A stretch of DNA of 64,000 nucleotides from Klebsormidium nitens (lineage: Eukaryota > Plantae > Klebsormidiophyceae), in contig DF237158.1 in the NCBI GenBank assembly GCA_000708835.1, positions 1 to 64,000 on the forward strand, given 5' to 3'. Below, one piece after another: positions 16,885 through 25,709 of the stretch (positions are counted from its first letter, which is position 1; each line of letters starts with the position of its first letter). Under the pieces are notes generated by a model. The model searched no databases. It had not been told where the DNA came from and worked only from the letters and a program-made list of their open reading frames with translations. The position numbers were made by a program, and so were the translations under genes.

Positions 16885-17634
16885 TCACATATCCTTTTGT
16901 AGCTTGGTCGCTCTGTGACGGTCCTGCCTGCACTCTCTACATACGACACCAAGTCCGTCCGCAGTCTTCCCACTAGCTACAAAGGAAGCTGCAGACTGCA
17001 CCGTTTTGCAAACAAAGCACATTTTGCTCTTCTTTGCAGTCATCTTGGCTAACTCGATCTGACGCGTTGTTAGTTCAAAGCATGAGGTGCAAACAAGGAG
17101 TGCTGACTTTTCATCAGATCGGGGCTTAAATTCTCCAGCACCTTTTCGAATCTTGCATAGATTGCATAGAAGCTTATGCCCCTCATAGCATGACTTACTC
17201 TTTGCAAGGCCAACTGAAGCCTCTGAATGCTTTTTGAAGAGAGACTCAGCATTAAGCTTTTTTAAATCACTTTGACTTTCATTGGACTTCTTCTTCGCTT
17301 TTCTAGCACGAAGTGCTGCACCCTCACATTCTTTGCAATCAGACCTAAGGCCTGATGCGCGGCCCCGGCTTTTGAAGTATGCACTTGCAGGTTTCATCTG
17401 GTTGCACCTGCTGCAGCGCTTCTCCTGAACATCGGGGGCCAGTACTGGCAGGGCTTGCTTCCGCAGCCGATTGTTCTTTGCCTTGGTGCACTCCTTGCAG
17501 GTGCTCATCAGGTTGAACCTGCACTGGCCGGGGTAGAAACCATCCCGCCCTTTCAATATGCCACACTTAGTGCACGTCTTGGCGATAGAGCTGGCGTCCA
17601 GAACGGGTATCTGCTGCAGGGCCCCTTCCTCCAT
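16885..17634 (-). CDS. Intronless 249-aa protein with four tandem CxxC-x21/22-CxxC zinc-ribbon repeats (Stc1-like / endonuclease-associated type)
   Basis: KTCTKCGILK..F..CKEC; KRCSRCNQMK..YF..SGLRSDCKEC; LCNLCKIRK..EF..VCTSC; KMCFVCK..SF..DGLGVVCREC. Single ORF from ATG to stop, basic composition. Confidence 0.75.
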   Translation of the reverse strand: MEEGALQQIPVLDASSIAKTCTKCGILKGRDGFYPGQCRFNLMSTCKECTKAKNNRLRKQALPVLAPDVQEKRCSRCNQMKPASAYFKSRGRASGLRSDCKECEGAALRARKAKKKSNESQSDLKKLNAESLFKKHSEASVGLAKSKSCYEGHKLLCNLCKIRKGAGEFKPRSDEKSALLVCTSCFELTTRQIELAKMTAKKSKMCFVCKTVQSAASFVASGKTADGLGVVCRECRQDRHRATKLQKDM

Positions 17635-18090: not shown

Positions 18091-21000
18091 ATGGCCTCCG
18101 TTGAGACCGCTGCAAATGAGGCAGAAATGCCCCCTGCAATTGCAACGGGCCAAGGCATGGGGTCCCCTCAAGGTGCTCCAGTATCTGCCACCTCTGATGA
18201 TCCTGGCCCACTCCCCACGTGGACATGTCTCTTTTGCACTTGGCAGAACGCTGATGTGCCCACCATCAATGTGTGTGACGCCTGCGAGAAACCCCGCAAT
18301 GCTAGCCCCAAAGTGGAGGAGAATGCTGCAGTGGAGGCTACTGGAGGTGTTGGGATGGAGCAAAAGGCCACCCCCTGGGCCTGTGCAGAGTGCACTTTCT
18401 GGAATGAGCCAGGCGCAGAGGCGTGTGCAATGTGCCAAGTAGTCCCAGGCTTTGCTAATGTCAGCGCTCCTGGTGGTGCTCAGGGACCCCCCAACGATGC
18501 ACATGGTGGCGCTCCCGTGAACAAACCCCTGAGCTGTGAAGCTTGTACAGCCAGCACACCGTGCCAGAATTGTCTGACTCAGCTGAACGCTAGCCTGGGG
18601 GGCCAAGAGGCCAGCGCTGAGCAGGGGGTGGGCCAGCAGGGGCAAGCAGCGGCAGGGGGTGACAATGTGGAAGAAGTGCACGCCCAACATACCGCAGGAG
18701 AGGAGGGGCAGCCACCACAAAGTGCCGAGCAGGGGACAGACAAGCCAGCGCAGAAGGCCCCCGGTAAGTGCTCGCCAGAAGTCTGAATTTCTCAAATGGT
18801 ACTGTTTGCTAGTGGTGGCTAGTGAAACCAGGATTTCCACAAGTTCAAATGTATTTGTAGTGACCGTGTTGCTGGGTGCCTGCAGAGCCTGTGATATGGA
18901 GCTGCCAGGTGTGTACGTTTGAGAACCAGGAGCCAGACGTTCGCTGCCAGGTGTGCACAAGCTCAAAGCCCCCACAGGGGGAGAACCCAGAACAGGTACG
19001 CACAAAGACTGTGACAGCCCGTACAGGCTCAGGGATCCCCAGGGGGAGTGACTCCTAAAGCGTATGAGATGTGTGGTGGAAATCTCCTGGCTGTGTTGTT
19101 TGTTCAAATGACGAGTCTTCTCTTGAACAAAGGCTCTGGGGTTTCTCTCAGTCCCCTTTTCACCATGGGTCTTCAATTGACGGGTGCAGACAAGTGGTTG
19201 GCATCCCTTGTCTGTGCAGGTGGCTGGTGCCAGCCAGAACATGTGCACCTTGTGCGGCCTGATCAAGCCGTTTGGCCAGCCATGGAAGGGCGGCCTCTGC
19301 TCTCAGTGTCGGCCCATTGTGGAAGAGGACCTACCAATGGACGTTGAAGGTATGAAATCTCTGGCGACTGTCTACAGGACTGCGCGGTGGACAGGACGGT
19401 ATTAAGCATGTTGAACCTTGGGTGACAGGATCTGAATGCCTCCCTCTCCTATGAGATCAAAAAGTCATAACTTGTGTCAACATCGTGGAAGTTAAAGTCT
19501 AGACAGTCTAGACAGCCTTTGCAATGGACCAAGATGAAGTCAGTCTTTAACACCAGACAGAAAATTATGCGACTGTACAAATCTTTCGTTGTCATCCTCC
19601 TTACTATGAGATTACAAATCCGCCTCGCCTGCGTTTTGTTCAGTGTTGGTACACTAGACAGCCACAAATACTTCGATCAAGGACCTGAGCCCGTTCATTC
19701 AATCATTTTCCAGCCCTCCCTGAGACTGAAGTGGGCCAGTCTCGGTCTGCTCCCCCGCCTGGTCCGTGCGGCGTGTGCCACAAGGTGGTCCCAGGCGTGC
19801 TCCTGCAGACGGTGGATGGGTGCGGTCACTGCGCGTGCTGCGCGTGCCTGGCCTCCCTCACCCTCACCAGGATGGACGTGGCCCCCCCGGCTTTAGCTGC
19901 AGCCCACAGCGACATCCTGGCACTTCTCCACTGCTGGGAAGCAGGGTGGGTCTGGCCAACGAGCCTGGCAAGGGCCCCTTCGCAGGGAGCACTTTAGATA
20001 CATGTCTTCTCTTGTGCTTCCTTGTGTCGCTCTACTTCAATCTGAAATTTTGCATCCCAGGCGCCAACAGATTTGCTCTTGCAAATCTGGAAGATGAGCA
20101 GTCGACTCCATCCCCGGCAGAACAACTGTTTCGAGGACCTTTTTCAGTGTCATATCCGTCCTCCTGTGCTGGTACAGTTGTCCCCGCCTCCTCAGCAGCG
20201 GCAGCCTGTCCTGCTCCCTGCCCCTCCCCAACTTCCTGGCCCTCTCGCACTGGCTGGTCACGGCCATCAGCAGCGTCTACCCGCAGCCGACTGCCGTCAC
20301 TAGTTCCAGCCCCGATAGGGCCACGAGCCAGGCTGGGGTGCAGGAGGCGCCCCCGGCAGGCCCCACGCCAGAATTCACCTGCGGGGCACAAGGCTGCCCC
20401 TCCCAGGGAGTTCCCCAGGCCTTTGTTTCAACTGGGGAGGGTGAGCTTCCAGTCTCTCATTGAATTTCGGCAACTGTAGGCCCCGCCCATCGGTACAATG
20501 CGTGTATACAAGAAGTTCGCTGAGCTCGAAAGCACCGAAAGAGTGTGACAAACATTCTGCCGTCAACGAGTCTTTCTGTTCTTCGATTAGAGCAAGCCGC
20601 TCTGGAAACCCAACCACCAGAGCAGCTAAACGAGCTTGCTTAGCTGGACAGTAGTTTTGACATAACCCAGGAGTGCCCCGGTTCAAAAGTAGTGCGCAAC
20701 CAGTACCTTTCGACTGGCCCCTACCTGATACGCTTTCATGCAGACCCTCTTCTTGCTGAATCAAGCTCCCGTGTGTTTCCCAACACCTCTTTTGTTTCAT
20801 GTCGTGTGCAGGTGATCCGTCCCACGTGTGGGCGGTATGTGCGGCGTGCCCCCACATGACGTGCCTGGCGTGTGGCGCGGCGGTGGGTGTCTCCCTGGAC
20901 GCTGAGTACCGCGACCACCGCTTCAGCTGCCCCCTGGCGCAGACGTGGGACGTGTTCCGCGCGCTGCTCGCGTTCGAGGAGGCCTTCCGGACCAACGAGG

Positions 21001-24000
21001 CCGTCGGGAAGGCCAGCGCAGACGACGCAGAGGGCCGCTCGCACAAGAAGCAGAAGACGGAGGCAGCAGGGAGCGGCAAGAGGAGGATTGTGTGGGCCAA
21101 GGGCACAGGTCAGCGCGCCTGACCCGAACGTGTGCGGATCACGGCCTTGCAGAGCGCGTTCGAAGCTCTTGTGGGGAGCTGAAGCTGACTCTGTGAGGGT
21201 TCGGCTTTCTTTGGGCAGGCTTAGGCTCTTAGGTTGGATCCCCGACGTCGATCTTTGGGATGCGTGAGGTTAGGAGCACCGTGTCCGACTGACGCCCCTT
21301 CGTATGTAGCCCAGTCTTGGTTGCGAGATCTGTACGGCTTTGATTGAAAGCAGATACTTCATGCTTACGTCGAGCACGTTCTCGGGTTGTGCCAATCTCC
21401 TTGGCTCCGTGCTGACAAGTCAGAGCTGCAGAGCGGACCTCAGGCGCCTGAGAGGACCTTTGCCGACCTATACCACTCTGAGCGTTGGTCTGCCTTTAGC
21501 TTCTACTGGAGACAAGGGTGACAGTCCGGTACATTCGTGTGCAGGCTTTGGCGGCGGTGGTCGCGACGAGTACGAGGAGGACGCGTACGACGACGAGGAC
21601 GAGGACGAGGAGGACGAGGACGACAACGAGGAGCCTTTTGAGGAAGACGACGTCGACGAGGGGGAGCAGGCTCTGGCGGGACTTGGCGAGGGGTCGGGCG
21701 ACGAGCCCGACGATGAAGACGATGACGACGACATGGATGACGTGGGCGAGGAGGAAGAGGCAGCGCTGCTGCAGGCGCTGCTGGCATCGCAGGCGGAGGC
21801 GGGGGCCGCCACACAAGGAGGCGAGCAGGAGCAAGCGGAGGGCGCAGCCACCGGCCCAGTCTCGGGTGGGGGCACAGACGCACCCAAGGAGAGCCCAATG
21901 GGAGAGGCGGCCCAGGGCACGCACCACTCTGGCGCCACCGGCAATGACGGAGAACAACATGGGCAGCTGCTGTCCGCATCGGCAGGAGGGCAAGCAGCGG
22001 ACTTGCTGGCGGGGATGTCGCCCGTCACGCCCTCTGTCGGGGAAGCTCCCGTGAAAGCAGCCTCTCCACCGTGGGCAGCCGCCGGCAGTCCACCGGAAGC
22101 CACGGCCTTCCCTGGCAACATGCTCGAGACGAGCCCTGCCGCTGAAATGCCTGCATCCAACGCTGAAGCTGCTCCAGAGGCGGCCACGGGGGGGACAGCG
22201 CATACAGCAGCGACCGGAAGTTCCGCGGGTCCTGTCGCTCCCCAGCTGCCGACTGGATTCCACCTCGACCTAGCAACGATCCCCGGTGCAGTGCCAGGCC
22301 CTCTCGGCGGTGTCCCCGACGCTGCTCCCGCCCTGGCTGCTGCCGGCATGTCCCCGCTTGCGGGCATGGTTCCCCCTGCGGGCTTGTTCGGCCTGCCTTC
22401 CGGCGTGGCGGGGGTCGGGCCGTCCTCGGACAAGCGCAAGGAGCGCAAGGATAAGGAGGAGGCGCGAGAGGAAAAGCTGCGCGAGCGCGAGAGGCAGGCC
22501 GACATCCGACTGGCGCTGGCGGCAGAAGCCCTCACGGAAACACTGTCAGGTGCGGGAGGGCATTTGCGCAAAGGCGGGATGTGGTGGCTGATGGTCAACT
22601 TCGTTTGCTTGGATAGTTCTCTTCCCTCTTGCATCACTTTCCCGTTTAGAAGTGTCCCCTCCTATTCGCAGAAATTGCACACAAAGTATCTTCGTTCCGT
22701 CTCGTGAAGCTGGGGAACGAGACCGTACGGTTTGTGCCGACGTAGATTATCTCTTTCCGGTAAAGATTACCAGTTTGTCGGGTCTGTACTGGTCGCCCGA
22801 CACTAAGCCTCCTCCGCTCGTACAGGCGACGACTTTGCGCCTGTGCCCAACGCTGCGACAGCGGCCCTGGTGCGGCGCAGCTGGGCTTGCCGCATATTGG
22901 CGGCGGTGCTGGCGCGGTGCAGCCTGCTGGACGTGGGCCACTGCCGCGAGCGCGAGCAGCTGTACCTGCACCTGCTGCACCTCGTGCGTGCGCTGGGCCG
23001 CCACTCCGACCTGCTGCCCGCGCTGCTCGCCGACAAGGACGACGATGACGACGGGCCGCACGCCAAGCACGCCGGCCCCGACCCGCGAGGCGCGGAGCGC
23101 AAGCGGAGCAAGGGCCTGCTCGGCATCGTGCTCACCACCATCAGCTGCGCGCTGGCAAAGCGGCGGAGGCAGGACGGGCCATCACAGGATATGGAGGAAA
23201 CTGCTCGCAAGCAGCCGGAAGGGGGAGGGGTGTCGTCCGTGATGGACGGGCTGGCTGCAGCGGAGGTGGTGGCAGAGCGGGGCATCCGGCCCGACCCGGC
23301 GCTGAAGCCGGAGCGCATCGTTCTGGAGGGCGGGCGGTCGGTGCTGGCGGCGCTGGCGGACCTGAACCGGCAGGCGCGCATTGTACAGCAGGGGCTGAAG
23401 CACGGCATGGCGGAGGGCGAGAACGAGGGCGACTTCGGGGTGGCCATGGTCGGGCTGGTCCTCGAGGTGAGCGACTGCTACGAGCAGGCCAGCCGCCGCG
23501 CCGCACTCTGGGACAGCGAGCGCAGGCAGGCCGGCGAGGAGCGGGACGCGCTGGCCGCGCTCGAGCAGAGCGCCCGGGAAGCGGAGGAGCGCGCAGTTGC
23601 AAACGAGAGCGAAAACGGGCGGCATGGCGGGGAGGCCGCGAACAGCGAGGATGGAGCTGAAACCGAAATGTCAGAGGAGCTCGTTGCCAAAGAAGATGCG
23701 CCGGAAGTGGAGGTCGAGGATGCGCCCGCTGCGCAGACTGGTGATCAGGAGATGGCGGAAGCCGAGCGGGCGGTAGGAGGCTCGGGAGAGGCCGCCGGGG
23801 CGATATCCAAGTTGGGGTTAGAATCGTCGGGTGCGGACCAAGCCCGCGGGAAAACCCCGCTCAAGGAGCGGGTGATGAAGGGGCTCAAGGGGATGCTGAT
23901 CAGCAAGAAGAACCACGGCAAGCAGAAGGAGCAGGTCGCAGAGGCCACTCCGAACGGGGAAGCGAAGCGGGAGGAGGAGGAGCTGCCGAAGACTGCGGAC

Positions 24001-25709
24001 GCCGGGGCGGGCAGGGGCACGGGGGCAGAGGGCGGGCCGAGCCTGGAGGCGCGCATCCGGGCGTACAAGGCGGGGCTGAAGGCGGTGCAGTTCCAGGAGG
24101 TGTCGCTGCTCGGGGAGGACGGGCAGTACGAGCACAACTACAGGCACGGCACACCACCGGTCGCACTCTGAAATACCAACTCCTTGTTTGGTGGAGGGAG
24201 TAGTTACCGGGAGATTGTGAAAGTGCTTGCGTGTCCGTCGCTGAATATGGAGGCTTCTGACAGTGTCTTGCTCGAAAGATTGTCTGTTAAACGACGCGAG
24301 ATTTGATTTGACTTGACTGCTTGTCACTGTCTCGTTTAGAGTGAAGGTGCTGGTGTGAAAGGTAGAACGCTTCTCAGTGCTGAGGCACCAAGGAAGAGAG
24401 CGGGCTGGGTGCAGTTGCTGATTTAATTCCCTCCGAACAAGGTTGTTTACTGCTCAGATTTGTTTTTTATGATTCTATTCTACATGATTCCGAGCCGCCC
24501 AGATTGACCGCCGTTCGGCCGTGGTGCAGGGGCGAGGTGGGCAGCGCGTATGGCGAGCAGTCGGGCAGCGGCGCGCACTCTGCGAAGCGGCAGCTGCGCA
24601 TGCTGCGCGAGATCGCGTCGCTGGCCACGACGCTGCCGCTGGAGTGGGAGTCGTCGGTGCACATCCGCGTGGACACCACCCGCATGGACCTGCTCAAGGC
24701 CGCCATCATCGGGCCCCAGGACACGCCCTACAGGCAAGCCCCGCACTCCCACCCACCAGCTCGGGGCGCCATTTGTGAAGTCCATATCAACCTCCCGTTT
24801 CTAGAAGGTAGATTTGGTTGTGCTCTGAGCAAATCTAATCTCTGCTGGTGTGTTTGCAGCAACGGCATCTGGCTGTTCGACGTGCTGCTGCCCCCCGACT
24901 ACCCCGAGATGCCGCCCCGCGTCAAATTCCTCACCACGGGCGGCGGCACCGTGCGCTTCAACCCCAACCTGTACGACTGCGGCAAGGTGCGTCACCCGGC
25001 ACCGCACTTACCACAGGACTGCGCGTGTCTCGCAGAAGCGTCTTAGCCCCAGCAGCATCATGTTCAAACTCTATTGGAAAGTCCAAGCATCGAAACTACA
25101 GACACAATCAGTGAGGAGCGCTGGCCAATCCTCCTTACTTATGCTGTCTATTCAGGTCTGGGTTCACCCTCCATTGCCTCCCTTGCGTTAGGGCAAGCTC
25201 TTCGATTTGTTCCCCTAAGGGTTGCCCCGTAGTTTTGGTCCCTCTCTTGTTTGAAGTAAGTGCGCAATTCTGCAGGGTGCCGCCTGCCTTGACGCCCTTT
25301 GCATGCGTGCGTACAGGTGTGCCTGTCGTTGCTGGGCACGTGGTCAGGCCCGAGCTGGCGGCCGGGCAAGTCGACGCTGCTGCAGGTGCTCATCTCGCTG
25401 CAGAGCCTGGTGTTCGTCGCGGAGCCGTACTACAACGAGCCCGGCTACGAGGCGCGCGAGTCCAGCGCCGCTTCGGAGGCGTACAACCAGGACGTGCGCC
25501 TCAACGCCATGCGGTACGCCATCCTGGCGCCCCTCAAGAGCCCCCCCCGCGCCTTCCAGGACGTGACGCAGCAGCACTTCAAGCTGAAGCGCGCGGAGCT
25601 GGCGGCGCAAGTCGACGACTGGATCAGCCGAGCGGACAGCAAACATAAGGAGGCCTGCACGCAGGTCGGCGCAGAGATCATGGAGGAGCTGGCCAAGCTC
25701 GGCGAGTAG
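18091..25709 (+). CDS. Giant E2/E3 hybrid-like protein: RanBP2/NZF zinc fingers + RBR-type RING + IBR-like + BIRC6-type C-terminal region with UBC domain
   Basis: NZFs: [50 protein letters not shown]: [22 protein letters not shown]-like: CGAQGC..CAAC..TCLAC..H..C. BIRC6-like WAKGTGFG (spliced) and SLLD..R..LYLHLL.L. UBC: [80 protein letters not shown]....PYYNEPGYE. All exon junctions I checked keep frame. Confidence 0.85.
24144..24529 (+). other. Predicted non-canonical GC-AG intron (donor TACAG|GCACGG)
   Basis: This is the only donor before the stop at 24169-24171 whose phase (2) matches the acceptor ttgac...gtgcag|G. The nearby GT at 24160 is phase 0. Confidence 0.6.
24734..24859 (+). other. 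Predicted non-canonical GC-AG intron (donor TACAG|GCAAGC), 126 nt, in frame and stop-free
   Basis: Removing it restores the UBC core sequence [15 protein letters not shown]. Acceptor is tgtgtttgcag. Confidence 0.7.

What the first reader, a model, noticed from the sequence alone, without database searches (positions are those of the whole stretch)
18091..25709. NZF x3 - RING1 - IBR - BIRC6-type UBC: an RBR-like front end fused to an E2 in one polypeptide
Seen in the sequence, with checked junctions in frame: three RanBP2/NZF fingers, two extra CxxC..CxxC ribbons, a C3HC4 RING ending C-x4-C (CWEAGC, typical of RBR RING1), an IBR-like C6HC domain, the WAKGTGFG motif, an acidic tract, a BIRC6-like helical segment, and a UBC domain with an intact catalytic Cys (GKVCLSLL). 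I see no RING2/Rcat. Established: BIRC6 and UBE2O are E2/E3 hybrids; RBR ligases use RING1 to hold E2~Ub and RING2 as the catalytic acceptor; NZFs bind ubiquitin chains, as in HOIP. Inference: a self-contained ubiquitin-chain-reading conjugase in which the UBC replaces RING2, or an E2-to-E2 relay. I do not recall this architecture being described.
Basis: partly seen in the sequence, partly recalled or inferred. Interest (0 to 1): 0.78.

Follow-up and report, generated by a model that had tools for sequence, protein, structure and literature searches.

The report
Algal RING1-IBR fused to BIRC6-type E2
One expressed 11-exon gene of a streptophyte alga encodes a 1,583-residue protein that joins ubiquitin-binding zinc fingers and the first two-thirds of a parkin-type (RBR) ligase to the ubiquitin-carrying end of the animal enzyme BIRC6; it belongs to an old, widespread family for which I found no published study.

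Summary
Spliced transcript contigs from four independent runs join exons 1-9 (junctions 1-8). With two homology-placed junctions they give one clean 1,583-aa ORF at 18091-25709.

- **UBC:** BIRC6-type, 6e-26 to solved BIRC6 UBC structures.
- **Stretch before the UBC:** as a family profile, WAKGTGFG plus the helical region matches BIRC6 residues 4288-4553 (8e-21).
- **RING:** RBR RING1 type. A relative's model has RBR RING1s as the top 11 of 48,161 solved chains.
- **Second zinc domain:** IBR ligand order. It links to Pfam IBR only through fungal relatives. The direct fold test was inconclusive.
- **NZFs:** NZF2 and NZF3 resemble ubiquitin-binding NZFs. NZF1 is atypical.
- **Rcat:** none.

The architecture is not a one-off. 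It occurs in chlorophyte and streptophyte algae, bryophytes, ferns and gymnosperms, including a 1,209-aa Klebsormidium paralog that this scan already followed up. Basidiomycetes carry an IBR-UBC version, and one transcript contig encodes a complete RBR plus this UBC.

I found no paper on the family. The mechanism is inferred: most likely a BIRC6-like E2/E3 hybrid working on already ubiquitinated proteins.

The parts
18091..25709 (+). Whole CDS: 11 exons, 1,583 aa, stop TAG at 25707-25709
   Evidence: Spliced model. Junctions E1-E9 are seen in RNA contigs of 4 runs. Colinear 11-exon orthologs in L001 and L002.
18220..18294 (+). NZF1 (aa 44-68): atypical RanBP2-type finger with TW instead of TF and a longer loop
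   Evidence: Pattern match. No Pfam hit. Conserved in L002; in L001 a TGA sits at the first Cys codon.
18376..18438 (+). NZF2 (aa 96-116): W-x-C-x2-C-T-F-x-N-x6-C-x-M-C
   Evidence: Best solved match is the NPL4 NZF at 5.2e-5, then TAB3, Nup358, TRABID, TAB2 and HOIP zinc fingers. Pfam zf-RanBP 17.4 bits, below cutoff. dN/dS for aa 40-120 is 0.12 against L002.
18535..18573 (+). Extra zinc knuckle (C149-x2-C152-x5-C158-x2-C161)
   Evidence: Seen in the sequence. All four Cys are conserved in L001 and L002. No family hit.
18897..18956 (+). NZF3 (aa 229-248), with TF and a hydrophobic residue between the last two Cys
   Evidence: Pfam zf-RanBP 18.8 bits, E 9.8e-4, below cutoff. Conserved in L001 and L002.
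19244..19309 (+). Extra zinc ribbon (C270-x2-C273-x14-C288-x2-C291)
   Evidence: 76-86% identical in L001 and L002. Only a chance-level zf-A20 hit.
19767..20277 (+). RBR-type RING1 (aa 323-383) plus the following helix, split by intron 4 (19946-20177)
   Evidence: All 8 ligands are conserved in orthologs. A family profile built without this gene matches aa 315-579 at 89.6 bits. The family profile hits RNF144A and HOIL-1 RING1. A relative's AF2 model has RBR RING1s as its top 11 structural matches.
20380..20930 (+). IBR-like C6HC domain (aa 450-509), split by intron 5 (20441-20811)
   Evidence: Ligand order matches the parkin IBR. The equivalent fungal domain hits Pfam IBR in 24 of 25 members. 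hhalign of fungal against plant/algal alignments gives 98.5% probability, E 3e-15. The direct fold test was inconclusive.
21093..21552 (+). WAKGTGFG motif (aa 564-571), split by intron 6 (21109-21544)
   Evidence: Junction seen in RNA contigs. The motif aligns to BIRC6 'YWAKGTGFG' at residue 4288 onward.
21562..21759 (+). Acidic tract (aa about 575-640), followed by an Ala/Pro/Gly-rich linker up to about aa 870
   Evidence: Translation. Poorly conserved, dN/dS about 0.3-0.5.
22828..24143 (+). BIRC6-like helical region (aa 905-1130), Glu/Ala-rich linker, and the pre-UBC helix from Y1317 (24064-24143)
   Evidence: Family profile A2 matches BIRC6 residues 4288-4553 at E 8e-21. The exon alone finds nothing in the PDB.
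24582..25517 (+). BIRC6-type UBC core (aa about 1361-1520). Catalytic Cys1455 is the codon at 25320-25322
   Evidence: Pfam UQ_con 4.3e-9 on an exon piece. Exon 11 matches BIRC6 UBC structures at 6e-26.
24144..24529 (+). Intron 8, GC..AG (donor GCACGG)
   Evidence: Joint 24140 to 24527 with 4 ambiguous bases in all 4 runs. Sequence read.
24734..24859 (+). Intron 9, GC..AG (donor GCAAGC); placed by homology, not covered by laid reads
   Evidence: Sequence. It restores the BIRC6-like 'DTPY-S-NG' continuity. L001 and L002 have the same exon break.

Best explanation
**What it is (shown).** This is a single expressed gene for a 1,583-aa member of a conserved eukaryotic family. In this family the C-terminal catalytic module of BIRC6 (the WAxGTGxG motif, a helical 'NDSxLD' region, a pre-UBC helix and a UBC with an active Cys) is preceded by an RBR-derived RING1-IBR unit that has no Rcat. 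In algae, one to three NZF fingers come before that.

**How it most likely works (inferred).**
1. The UBC Cys1455 is charged directly by an E1, as in BIRC6 and UBE2O.
2. The protein then acts as a self-contained E2/E3 hybrid.
3. The tandem NZFs (NZF2 and NZF3 keep the TF...hydrophobic ubiquitin-binding signature) bring in ubiquitin chains or ubiquitinated proteins. The output would then be chain extension or branching on proteins that are already ubiquitinated (E4-like).
4. RING1-IBR acts in cis. It docks the protein's own UBC~Ub, and/or offers the allosteric ubiquitin site that RBR RING1-IBR units have, so it positions or gates discharge rather than catalysing anything itself.
For: **One transcript.** GT..AG/GC..AG joints E1 to E9 appear in contigs of 4 runs, and two contigs span E1-E8. 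The ORF is clean.

**UBC and the region before it.** Exon 11 matches BIRC6 UBC structures at 6e-26. The pre-UBC region matches BIRC6 residues 4288-4553 at 8e-21.

**RING1 is of RBR type.** Profile hits to RNF144A (8.9e-5) and HOIL-1 (1.2e-4). The VIA search puts RBR RING1s in the top 11 of 48,161 chains, at Z 8.7 to 5.8, with ordinary RINGs at or below 5.4. Foldseek's top hits are the RNF216 and HOIL-1 RBRs. Eight of the 10 nearest ESM Atlas cluster types carry IBR.

**IBR by transitive homology**.

**No Rcat**.

**NZF2 resembles ubiquitin-binding NZFs**, with NPL4 as best match.

**Selection and conservation.** dN/dS is 0.12-0.42 on the zinc domains and about 0.2 on the UBC. All ligands are kept in orthologs that are 55% and 79% identical.

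**Family spread and tree**.

**A complete RBR in front of the same UBC type** in P0045 suggests that RING1 and the UBC work as a pair.

**Literature.** BIRC6 and UBE2O are the known E3-independent E2s (PMC12818219, abstract, seen).
Against: - No biochemical data exist for any member.
- I could not model the full-length protein, so RING1-UBC docking in cis is not shown.
- RBR RING1 domains hold E2~Ub in an open, lysine-unreactive state. Cis docking could therefore inhibit rather than help.
- The NZFs score below Pfam's threshold, and land-plant members have lost them. Chain reading therefore cannot be the family's core function.
- The direct IBR fold test failed: pLDDT 62.7, best Z 2.8.
- P0045 is a single 1.9-kb transcript contig and could be an assembly chimera.
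Confidence: 0.5

Rival explanations
1. RING1 recruits a separate, E1-charged E2~Ub. Because there is no Rcat, ubiquitin is transthiolated onto the attached UBC Cys1455 (E2 to E2), which then modifies the NZF-bound substrate.
For: RING1 is of the RBR kind, which specialises in transthiolation rather than aminolysis (fold matches). There is no Rcat anywhere in the protein. The only conserved catalytic-type Cys downstream is the one in the UBC.
Against: I know of no precedent for E2-to-E2 transfer. BIRC6-type UBCs are charged directly by E1. P0045 keeps a full Rcat together with the same UBC type, which suggests that the UBC feeds the RBR rather than replacing its RING2. Fungal members lack RING1 altogether but keep IBR and UBC.
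Confidence: 0.13
2. Two engines. RING1 works as an ordinary RING E3 for a free E2, and the UBC works independently. The fusion only places two activities on the same NZF-bound substrate.
For: Pfam RING models pass their cutoffs in close relatives: zf-RING_UBOX 28-32 bits and zf-C3HC4 25-30 bits in P0003 and P0005. A hydrophobic residue at C1+2 (V325) is present, which is the usual E2 contact.
Against: The structural neighbours are RBR RING1s, not canonical RINGs. The residue after the last ligand is Pro, not the Arg/Lys/Asn 'linchpin' that canonical RINGs use to activate E2~Ub (sequence).
Confidence: 0.12
3. RING1-IBR is a non-catalytic relic of an ancestral RBR-UBC fusion, kept only as a structural or ubiquitin/partner-binding module. 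The protein is functionally just a BIRC6-like E2 with targeting domains.
For: Rcat is lost in all but one member. Fungi have lost RING1. The paralog and land-plant clade carries a SAP insertion inside the IBR, which shows that this region tolerates remodelling.
Against: All 16 zinc ligands are nearly invariant across the family and under purifying selection. That shows the fold matters, but it does not prove a catalytic role. This rival overlaps with the best explanation.
Confidence: 0.2
4. Artefact. Two neighbouring genes (a zinc-finger gene and an E2 gene) were read as one, or the contigs are chimeric.
For: I found no full-length public protein model for this locus. The big search with exon 8 returned only exon-sized ORFs from two other assemblies. 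A length-appropriate search did not list it either.
Against: Contigs from 4 studies splice E1 to E9 with consensus introns. The same colinear architecture is annotated as single proteins in more than 20 species. There is no stop in 4,752 nt.
Confidence: 0.02

Closest known systems
BIRC6 / BRUCE (animal giant E2/E3 hybrid)
   Same: UBC of the same subtype (GKVCLS-L, NPN; 6e-26). The roughly 270 residues before it (WAKGTGFG, NDSxLD helices, LQF helix) are shared at profile level with BIRC6 residues 4288-4553.
   Different: No BIR domain and no giant armadillo/WD40 scaffold. It has 1,583 aa against about 4,860. An NZF plus RING1-IBR front end takes the place of the BIRC6 N-terminus.
RBR ligases with NZFs: HOIL-1 (RBCK1) and HOIP (RNF31)
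   Same: NZF fingers are combined with an RBR-type RING1 and an IBR. HOIL-1 is among the best sequence and fold matches. UniRef names three family members after it.
   Different: No Rcat/RING2, so there is no RBR catalytic cysteine. A UBC domain sits at the C-terminus instead.
Klebsormidium nitens 1,209-aa protein P0027 (paralog; scan finding s1-316301)
   Same: Same order: NZF x3, RING1, IBR, GTGYG, helical region, UBC.
   Different: Only 25% identical in RING1-IBR and 55% in the UBC. P0027 has a SAP-like insertion inside the IBR. It lacks the two extra ribbons, the acidic tract and the long linkers of this gene.
Land-plant RING1-IBR-UBC proteins (for example Riccia R1flu_016813, Marchantia paleacea Mapa_002367, Physcomitrium)
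   Same: RING1-IBR-GTG-helical-UBC. The best match to this gene's RING-IBR region is P0005 at 2e-14.
   Different: About 870 aa, no NZFs, no acidic tract.
Basidiomycete 'ubiquitin conjugating enzyme family protein' (for example Coprinopsis P0055)
   Same: IBR-like domain, GTGYA motif, NDSLTD helices and the same UBC type.
   Different: No RING1 and no NZFs.
Angiosperm PHO2/UBC24 and UBC23-type large E2s
   Same: Large E2s whose UBC is related to the BIRC6 type.
   Different: They form a separate clade with 100% SH-aLRT support. They have no RING1-IBR, and none of them matches the RING-IBR profile.

Membership tests
BIRC6-type E2 module | UBC fold with the catalytic Cys in a GKVCLS-type loop and an NPN motif, closest to BIRC6 among solved E2s | tested here: met
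   Exon 11 against the PDB: BIRC6 chains at 6e-26, then UBE2O at about 5e-16 and UBE2Z at about 7e-15. Pfam UQ_con hit.
BIRC6-type E2 module | Conserved pre-UBC region (WAKGTGFG, NDSxLD helices, LQF helix) | tested here: met
   Family profile A2, which includes this gene's exons, matches BIRC6 residues 4288-4553 at E 8e-21. Exon 8 alone gave no hit.
BIRC6 orthologs | BIR domain and giant N-terminal scaffold | tested here: not met
   No BIR hit in any exon piece. The protein is 1,583 aa.
RBR E3 ligases | RING1 of the RBR type (C3HC4 ending C-x4-C, followed by a helix) | tested here: met
   Ligand pattern. Profile hits to RNF144A and HOIL-1 RING1. RBR RING1s are the top 11 structural matches of a close relative's model. 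This gene matches the family profile at 89.6 bits.
RBR E3 ligases | IBR domain (C6HC) | tested here: inconclusive
   The ligand order fits. The link to Pfam IBR is transitive only: fungal members score up to 1.3e-5, about at cutoff, and hhalign of fungal against plant/algal alignments gives 98.5%. Direct Pfam hits in plant and algal members are no better than 0.011. The fold test was uninformative.
RBR E3 ligases | RING2/Rcat with a catalytic cysteine | tested here: not met
   No Rcat pattern in the model. No Cys pairs after aa 510 except within the UBC. No IBR or IBR_1 hit on exons 7 and 8.
NZF / RanBP2-type ubiquitin-binding zinc fingers | W-x-C-x2-C-x3-N-x6-C-x2-C finger that passes the Pfam cutoff | tested here: inconclusive
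   The pattern is exact in NZF2 and NZF3. Pfam scores are 17.4 and 18.8 bits, below the cutoff of 27. NZF1 has no hit. NZF2 matches the NPL4 NZF at 5.2e-5.
NZF / RanBP2-type ubiquitin-binding zinc fingers | TF plus a hydrophobic residue (ubiquitin-contact signature); actual ubiquitin binding | not testable with these tools
   The signature is present in NZF2 (TF..M, identical to NPL4 in the alignment) and in NZF3 (TF..V). NZF1 has TW..A. Binding itself needs an experiment.
Green-lineage RING1-IBR-UBC family (uncharacterised) | Colinear RING1, IBR, WAxGTGxG, helical region and BIRC6-type UBC in one protein | tested here: met
   A profile built without this gene matches aa 315-579 in one stretch, E 1.2e-23. 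In the UBC tree the gene sits inside the streptophyte clade of the family.
E3-independent E2/E3 hybrid enzymes (functional class) | Substrate ubiquitination without a separate E3 | not testable with these tools
   Inferred only, from homology to the BIRC6 catalytic module.

The most novel reading that the evidence does not exclude
The family embodies a ligase logic not described so far. An RBR RING1-IBR that has lost its own catalytic Rcat would use the covalently attached BIRC6-type UBC cysteine as the ubiquitin acceptor. A free E2~Ub docks on RING1 and hands ubiquitin to Cys1455 (an E2-to-E2 relay), with the NZFs choosing ubiquitin chains as the substrate.
Probability: 0.12. Interest if true: 0.85.

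Novelty: new variant of a known kind. Interest (0 to 1): 0.6.

Why it matters
E2/E3 hybrids are currently described as just two enzymes, BIRC6 and UBE2O. This gene and its relatives show that the BIRC6 catalytic module is an old, portable cassette. In the green lineage it is wired to an RBR-derived RING1-IBR, often with ubiquitin-binding NZFs. In fungi it is wired to an IBR alone.

That gives a compact system of 870-1,600 aa for asking three questions:
- How does the BIRC6 module work without its 4,000-residue scaffold?
- What can an RBR RING1-IBR do without an Rcat?
- Can RING1 act on an E2 in cis?

The Marchantia and Physcomitrium orthologs are genetically tractable. The apparent absence from flowering plants would explain why plant ubiquitin research has overlooked the family.

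Tried and rejected
- **Pfam on raw ORF pieces** found only the UBC and a weak NZF3. RING and IBR are split by introns, so that blank meant nothing.
- **phmmer of single exons E4, E6 and E8 against the PDB** found nothing useful.
- **The one big HMMER search, with exon 8,** returned only 3 hits, because exon 8 is poorly conserved. It did give the entry points: P0003, and through P0001 and P0002 the loci L002 and L001.
- **A word search with whole P0003** found only 4 liverwort proteins. Searching with the UBC region opened up the family.
- **hhalign of the family IBR against the single-sequence IBR or Rcat of P0045** was uninformative. Probabilities were 0.5-39%, slightly better for Rcat, and single-sequence templates are too weak.
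- **AF2 of the isolated IBR** gave pLDDT 62.7, and its fold search reached a best Z of 2.8. I count this as inconclusive.
- **The protein atlas feature search** gave no usable hit.
- **A search for this gene's own public protein** did not list it. I could therefore not run Pfam or AF2 on the exact spliced protein by reference, and I did not type it in.
- **Rejected: a two-gene artefact**, because of the spliced contigs and the conserved architecture.
- **Rejected: a BIRC6 ortholog**, because there is no BIR domain or scaffold.
- **Rejected: a true RBR**, because there is no Rcat.
- **Rejected: a PHO2/UBC24 type**, because those form a separate clade.

Full report
**Gene model and expression.** The region is GC-rich exons separated by short introns. 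I laid Logan contigs of four runs from four studies on 18650-24649. The contigs are spliced, so these runs are RNA.
- They show joints at 18763/18886, 18995/19220, 19349/19714, 19945/20178, 20440/20812, 21108/21545 and 22549/22826. All of these are GT..AG.
- They also show a joint at 24143/24530, which the sequence shows to be GC..AG.
- Two contigs (5,364 and 5,203 nt) carry exons 1 to 8 in one piece, and the joint into exon 9 is present in all four runs.
- The last two introns (24734-24859, GC..AG, and 24987-25316, GT..AG) lay outside the 6,000 nt allowed. I placed them by BIRC6 homology and splice consensus. The 5,364-nt contig has about the right length left to cover them plus a 3' UTR.
- The eleven exons give a 4,752-nt ORF of 1,583 aa with no internal stop.

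**Checking the domains.**
- *UBC.* Exon 11 alone matches BIRC6 UBC structures at 6e-26, well ahead of UBE2O and UBE2Z. The protein has the GKVCLSLL loop and the NPN motif.
- *Pre-UBC region.* Exon 8 alone finds nothing in the PDB. A family alignment running from the GTG motif to the UBC (A2) matches BIRC6 residues 4288-4553 at 8e-21. That match includes YWAKGTGFG, LRNDSVLD...LY..LLELLR and the LQF helix.
- *RING.* The spliced pattern is C-x2-C-x14-C-x-H-x2-C-x2-C-x28-C-x4-C-P. Pfam does not see it in exon pieces, because the last ligand lies in the next exon.
  - Close relatives pass the Pfam RING cutoffs.
  - A profile of 25 relatives built without this gene matches aa 315-579 in one stretch: 89.6 bits, E 1.2e-23 for a nominal database of one million.
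  - The family profile's best solved matches are the RBR RING1 domains of RNF144A (8.9e-5) and HOIL-1 (1.2e-4). The HOIL-1 alignment runs into the first IBR Cys pair.
  - An AF2 model of the Marchantia paleacea relative (pLDDT 81.3, pTM 0.68) has RBR RING1 domains as the top 11 of 48,161 chains. These are RNF144A Z 8.7, ARIH2 7.7, parkin 7.1, and HOIL-1 and HOIP 6.6. The first ordinary RING scores 5.4.
  - Foldseek puts the RNF216 and HOIL-1 RBRs first.
  - Eight of the ten nearest ESM Atlas cluster types are IBR-bearing.
- *IBR.* The ligand order is C-x4-C-x23-C-x2-C-x4-C-x2-C-x14-H-x3-C. This is the IBR order, with a long last loop.
  - Direct evidence is weak. Pfam IBR is no better than 0.011 in plant and algal members. 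An AF2 model of the isolated domain reached only pLDDT 62.7 and found nothing.
  - Indirect evidence is good. The equivalent domain of 24 of 25 basidiomycete members hits Pfam IBR, best 1.3e-5 and about at cutoff. The fungal and plant/algal alignments match at 98.5% probability, E 3e-15.
- *NZFs.* NZF2's best solved match is the NPL4 NZF (5.2e-5), with identical TF and M positions. TAB3, Nup358, TRABID, TAB2 and HOIP zinc fingers follow. Pfam scores for NZF2 and NZF3 are sub-threshold, and NZF1 has none.
- *Extra ribbons.* The two extra Cys4 ribbons are real and conserved, but they match no family.
- *Rcat.* There is no Rcat. After aa 510 the only Cys pair lies in the UBC.

**Relatives.**
- The big search with exon 8 gave only three hits. 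Two are exon-sized ORFs, and their contigs (L002 at 79% identity, L001 at 55%) carry colinear 11-exon orthologs with every RING and IBR ligand conserved.
- dN/dS is 0.12 for NZF1-2, 0.23-0.24 for the IBR, 0.31-0.42 for RING1 and about 0.2 for the UBC.
- The third hit, Riccia fluitans R1flu_016813 (867 aa), has RING, IBR-like domain, WADGTGFG, helices and UBC.
- Searching with its UBC region opened a large family: liverworts, mosses, a lycophyte, ferns, gymnosperms, Klebsormidium, Chlorokybus, Mesostigma, Cymbomonas, trebouxiophytes, and many basidiomycetes.
- An iterated local profile from this gene's aa 300-575 pulls in about 100 of the 123 proteins. Green-lineage members match RING1 through GTG, while fungi match only the IBR-to-GTG half.
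- NZFs occur in the algal members (Klebsormidium 3, Chlorokybus 2, Myrmecia 2, Apatococcus 2, Mesostigma 1, Cymbomonas 1) but not in land plants.
- Angiosperm hits are PHO2/UBC24 or RWD types. They lack the RING-IBR and form a separate clade with 100% support.
- One Logan transcript contig, P0045 (595 aa), has a canonical full RBR in front of the same UBC type: Pfam IBR 54 bits, IBR_1, and an Rcat motif.

**Relation to earlier work of this scan.** The notes list a followed-up finding on another piece said to be of the same genome: a 1,209-residue NZF x3, RING1-IBR, UBC protein. That length and architecture equal Klebsormidium nitens P0027. This gene is a distinct paralog of P0027, 25% identical in RING-IBR and 55% in the UBC. 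It groups with L001 and L002 (99% support) inside the streptophyte clade. I did not verify the organism independently. I also found no full-length public protein for this locus.

**Mechanism.**
- *Shown:* a single transcript, the domain identities above, conservation, and the absence of an Rcat.
- *Inferred:* the BIRC6-homologous module is charged by E1 and acts as an E2/E3 hybrid. The NZFs recruit ubiquitin chains. RING1-IBR acts in cis on the UBC~Ub, or as an allosteric ubiquitin site.
It also fits less well with P0045 (Rcat and UBC together) and with the fungal members (no RING1).

**Literature.** Six full-text searches found no description of a RING1-IBR-UBC or RBR-UBC protein. A 2025 paper still describes BIRC6 and UBE2O as the only two E3-independent E2s (PMC12818219, abstract).

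**Verdict.** It is a new variant of a known kind, an E2/E3 hybrid with an RBR-derived front end. It is a second paralog of a family this scan has already met.

Noticed in passing
window 24144-24529 and 24734-24859: There are two consecutive GC..AG introns (donors GCACGG and GCAAGC) just before and inside the UBC-coding part. Such donors are often missed by gene predictors. This may be why I found no full-length public protein for this locus.
   Followed up: partly
window 21842 / 24043: Contigs in runs X1 and X5 show a non-consensus joint (CG..GC, 2,200 nt skipped, only 21 nt on one side) with 255-nt loose ends unlike the window. This is probably another locus or a chimeric contig sharing a short GC-rich word, not an isoform.
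   Followed up: no
window 19916-20206, 20455-20840, 24154-24509: Low-depth unspliced contigs (depth 6-11 against 55-224 for spliced ones) cover introns 4, 5 and 8. These are pre-mRNA or retained introns. One of them ends in Illumina adapter sequence.
   Followed up: no
L003 (P0045, Logan ERR2041121 contig, 1,931 nt): This is a 595-aa ORF with a complete canonical RBR (RING1-IBR-Rcat) directly fused to the same BIRC6-type UBC, without the GTG motif or the helical segment. If it is not an assembly chimera, it is an E2-RBR fusion and is arguably more striking than the window's gene.
   Followed up: partly
L001 5143-5151: In the 55%-identical relative from a JGI metagenome, a TGA replaces the first Cys codon of NZF1 (TGG GTC TGA GCT TTC TGT). 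Either NZF1 is being lost there or this is an assembly error.
   Followed up: partly
P0027, P0003-P0005, P0042, P0050 (alignment A1, columns about 215-265): A SAP-like helix-hairpin is inserted between the first and second halves of the IBR in the Klebsormidium paralog, liverworts and ferns. Pfam SAP hits 4 members, and the AF2 model is confident there. The insertion is absent from the window's gene and from mosses.
   Followed up: partly
window 16885-17634 (- strand): The upstream neighbour is a 249-aa ORF made of repeated CxxC...CxxC units. The syntenic ORF in L002 carries a faint Pfam Stc1 hit. Gene order appears conserved between the window and L002, with an ORF carrying a weak Pfam RNase_T hit further upstream in L002.
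   Followed up: no
P0044 (Klebsormidium nitens, 837 aa): A third Klebsormidium family member matches only the IBR-GTG-UBC part of the family profile, like the fungal proteins. Both architectures therefore coexist in one alga.
   Followed up: partly
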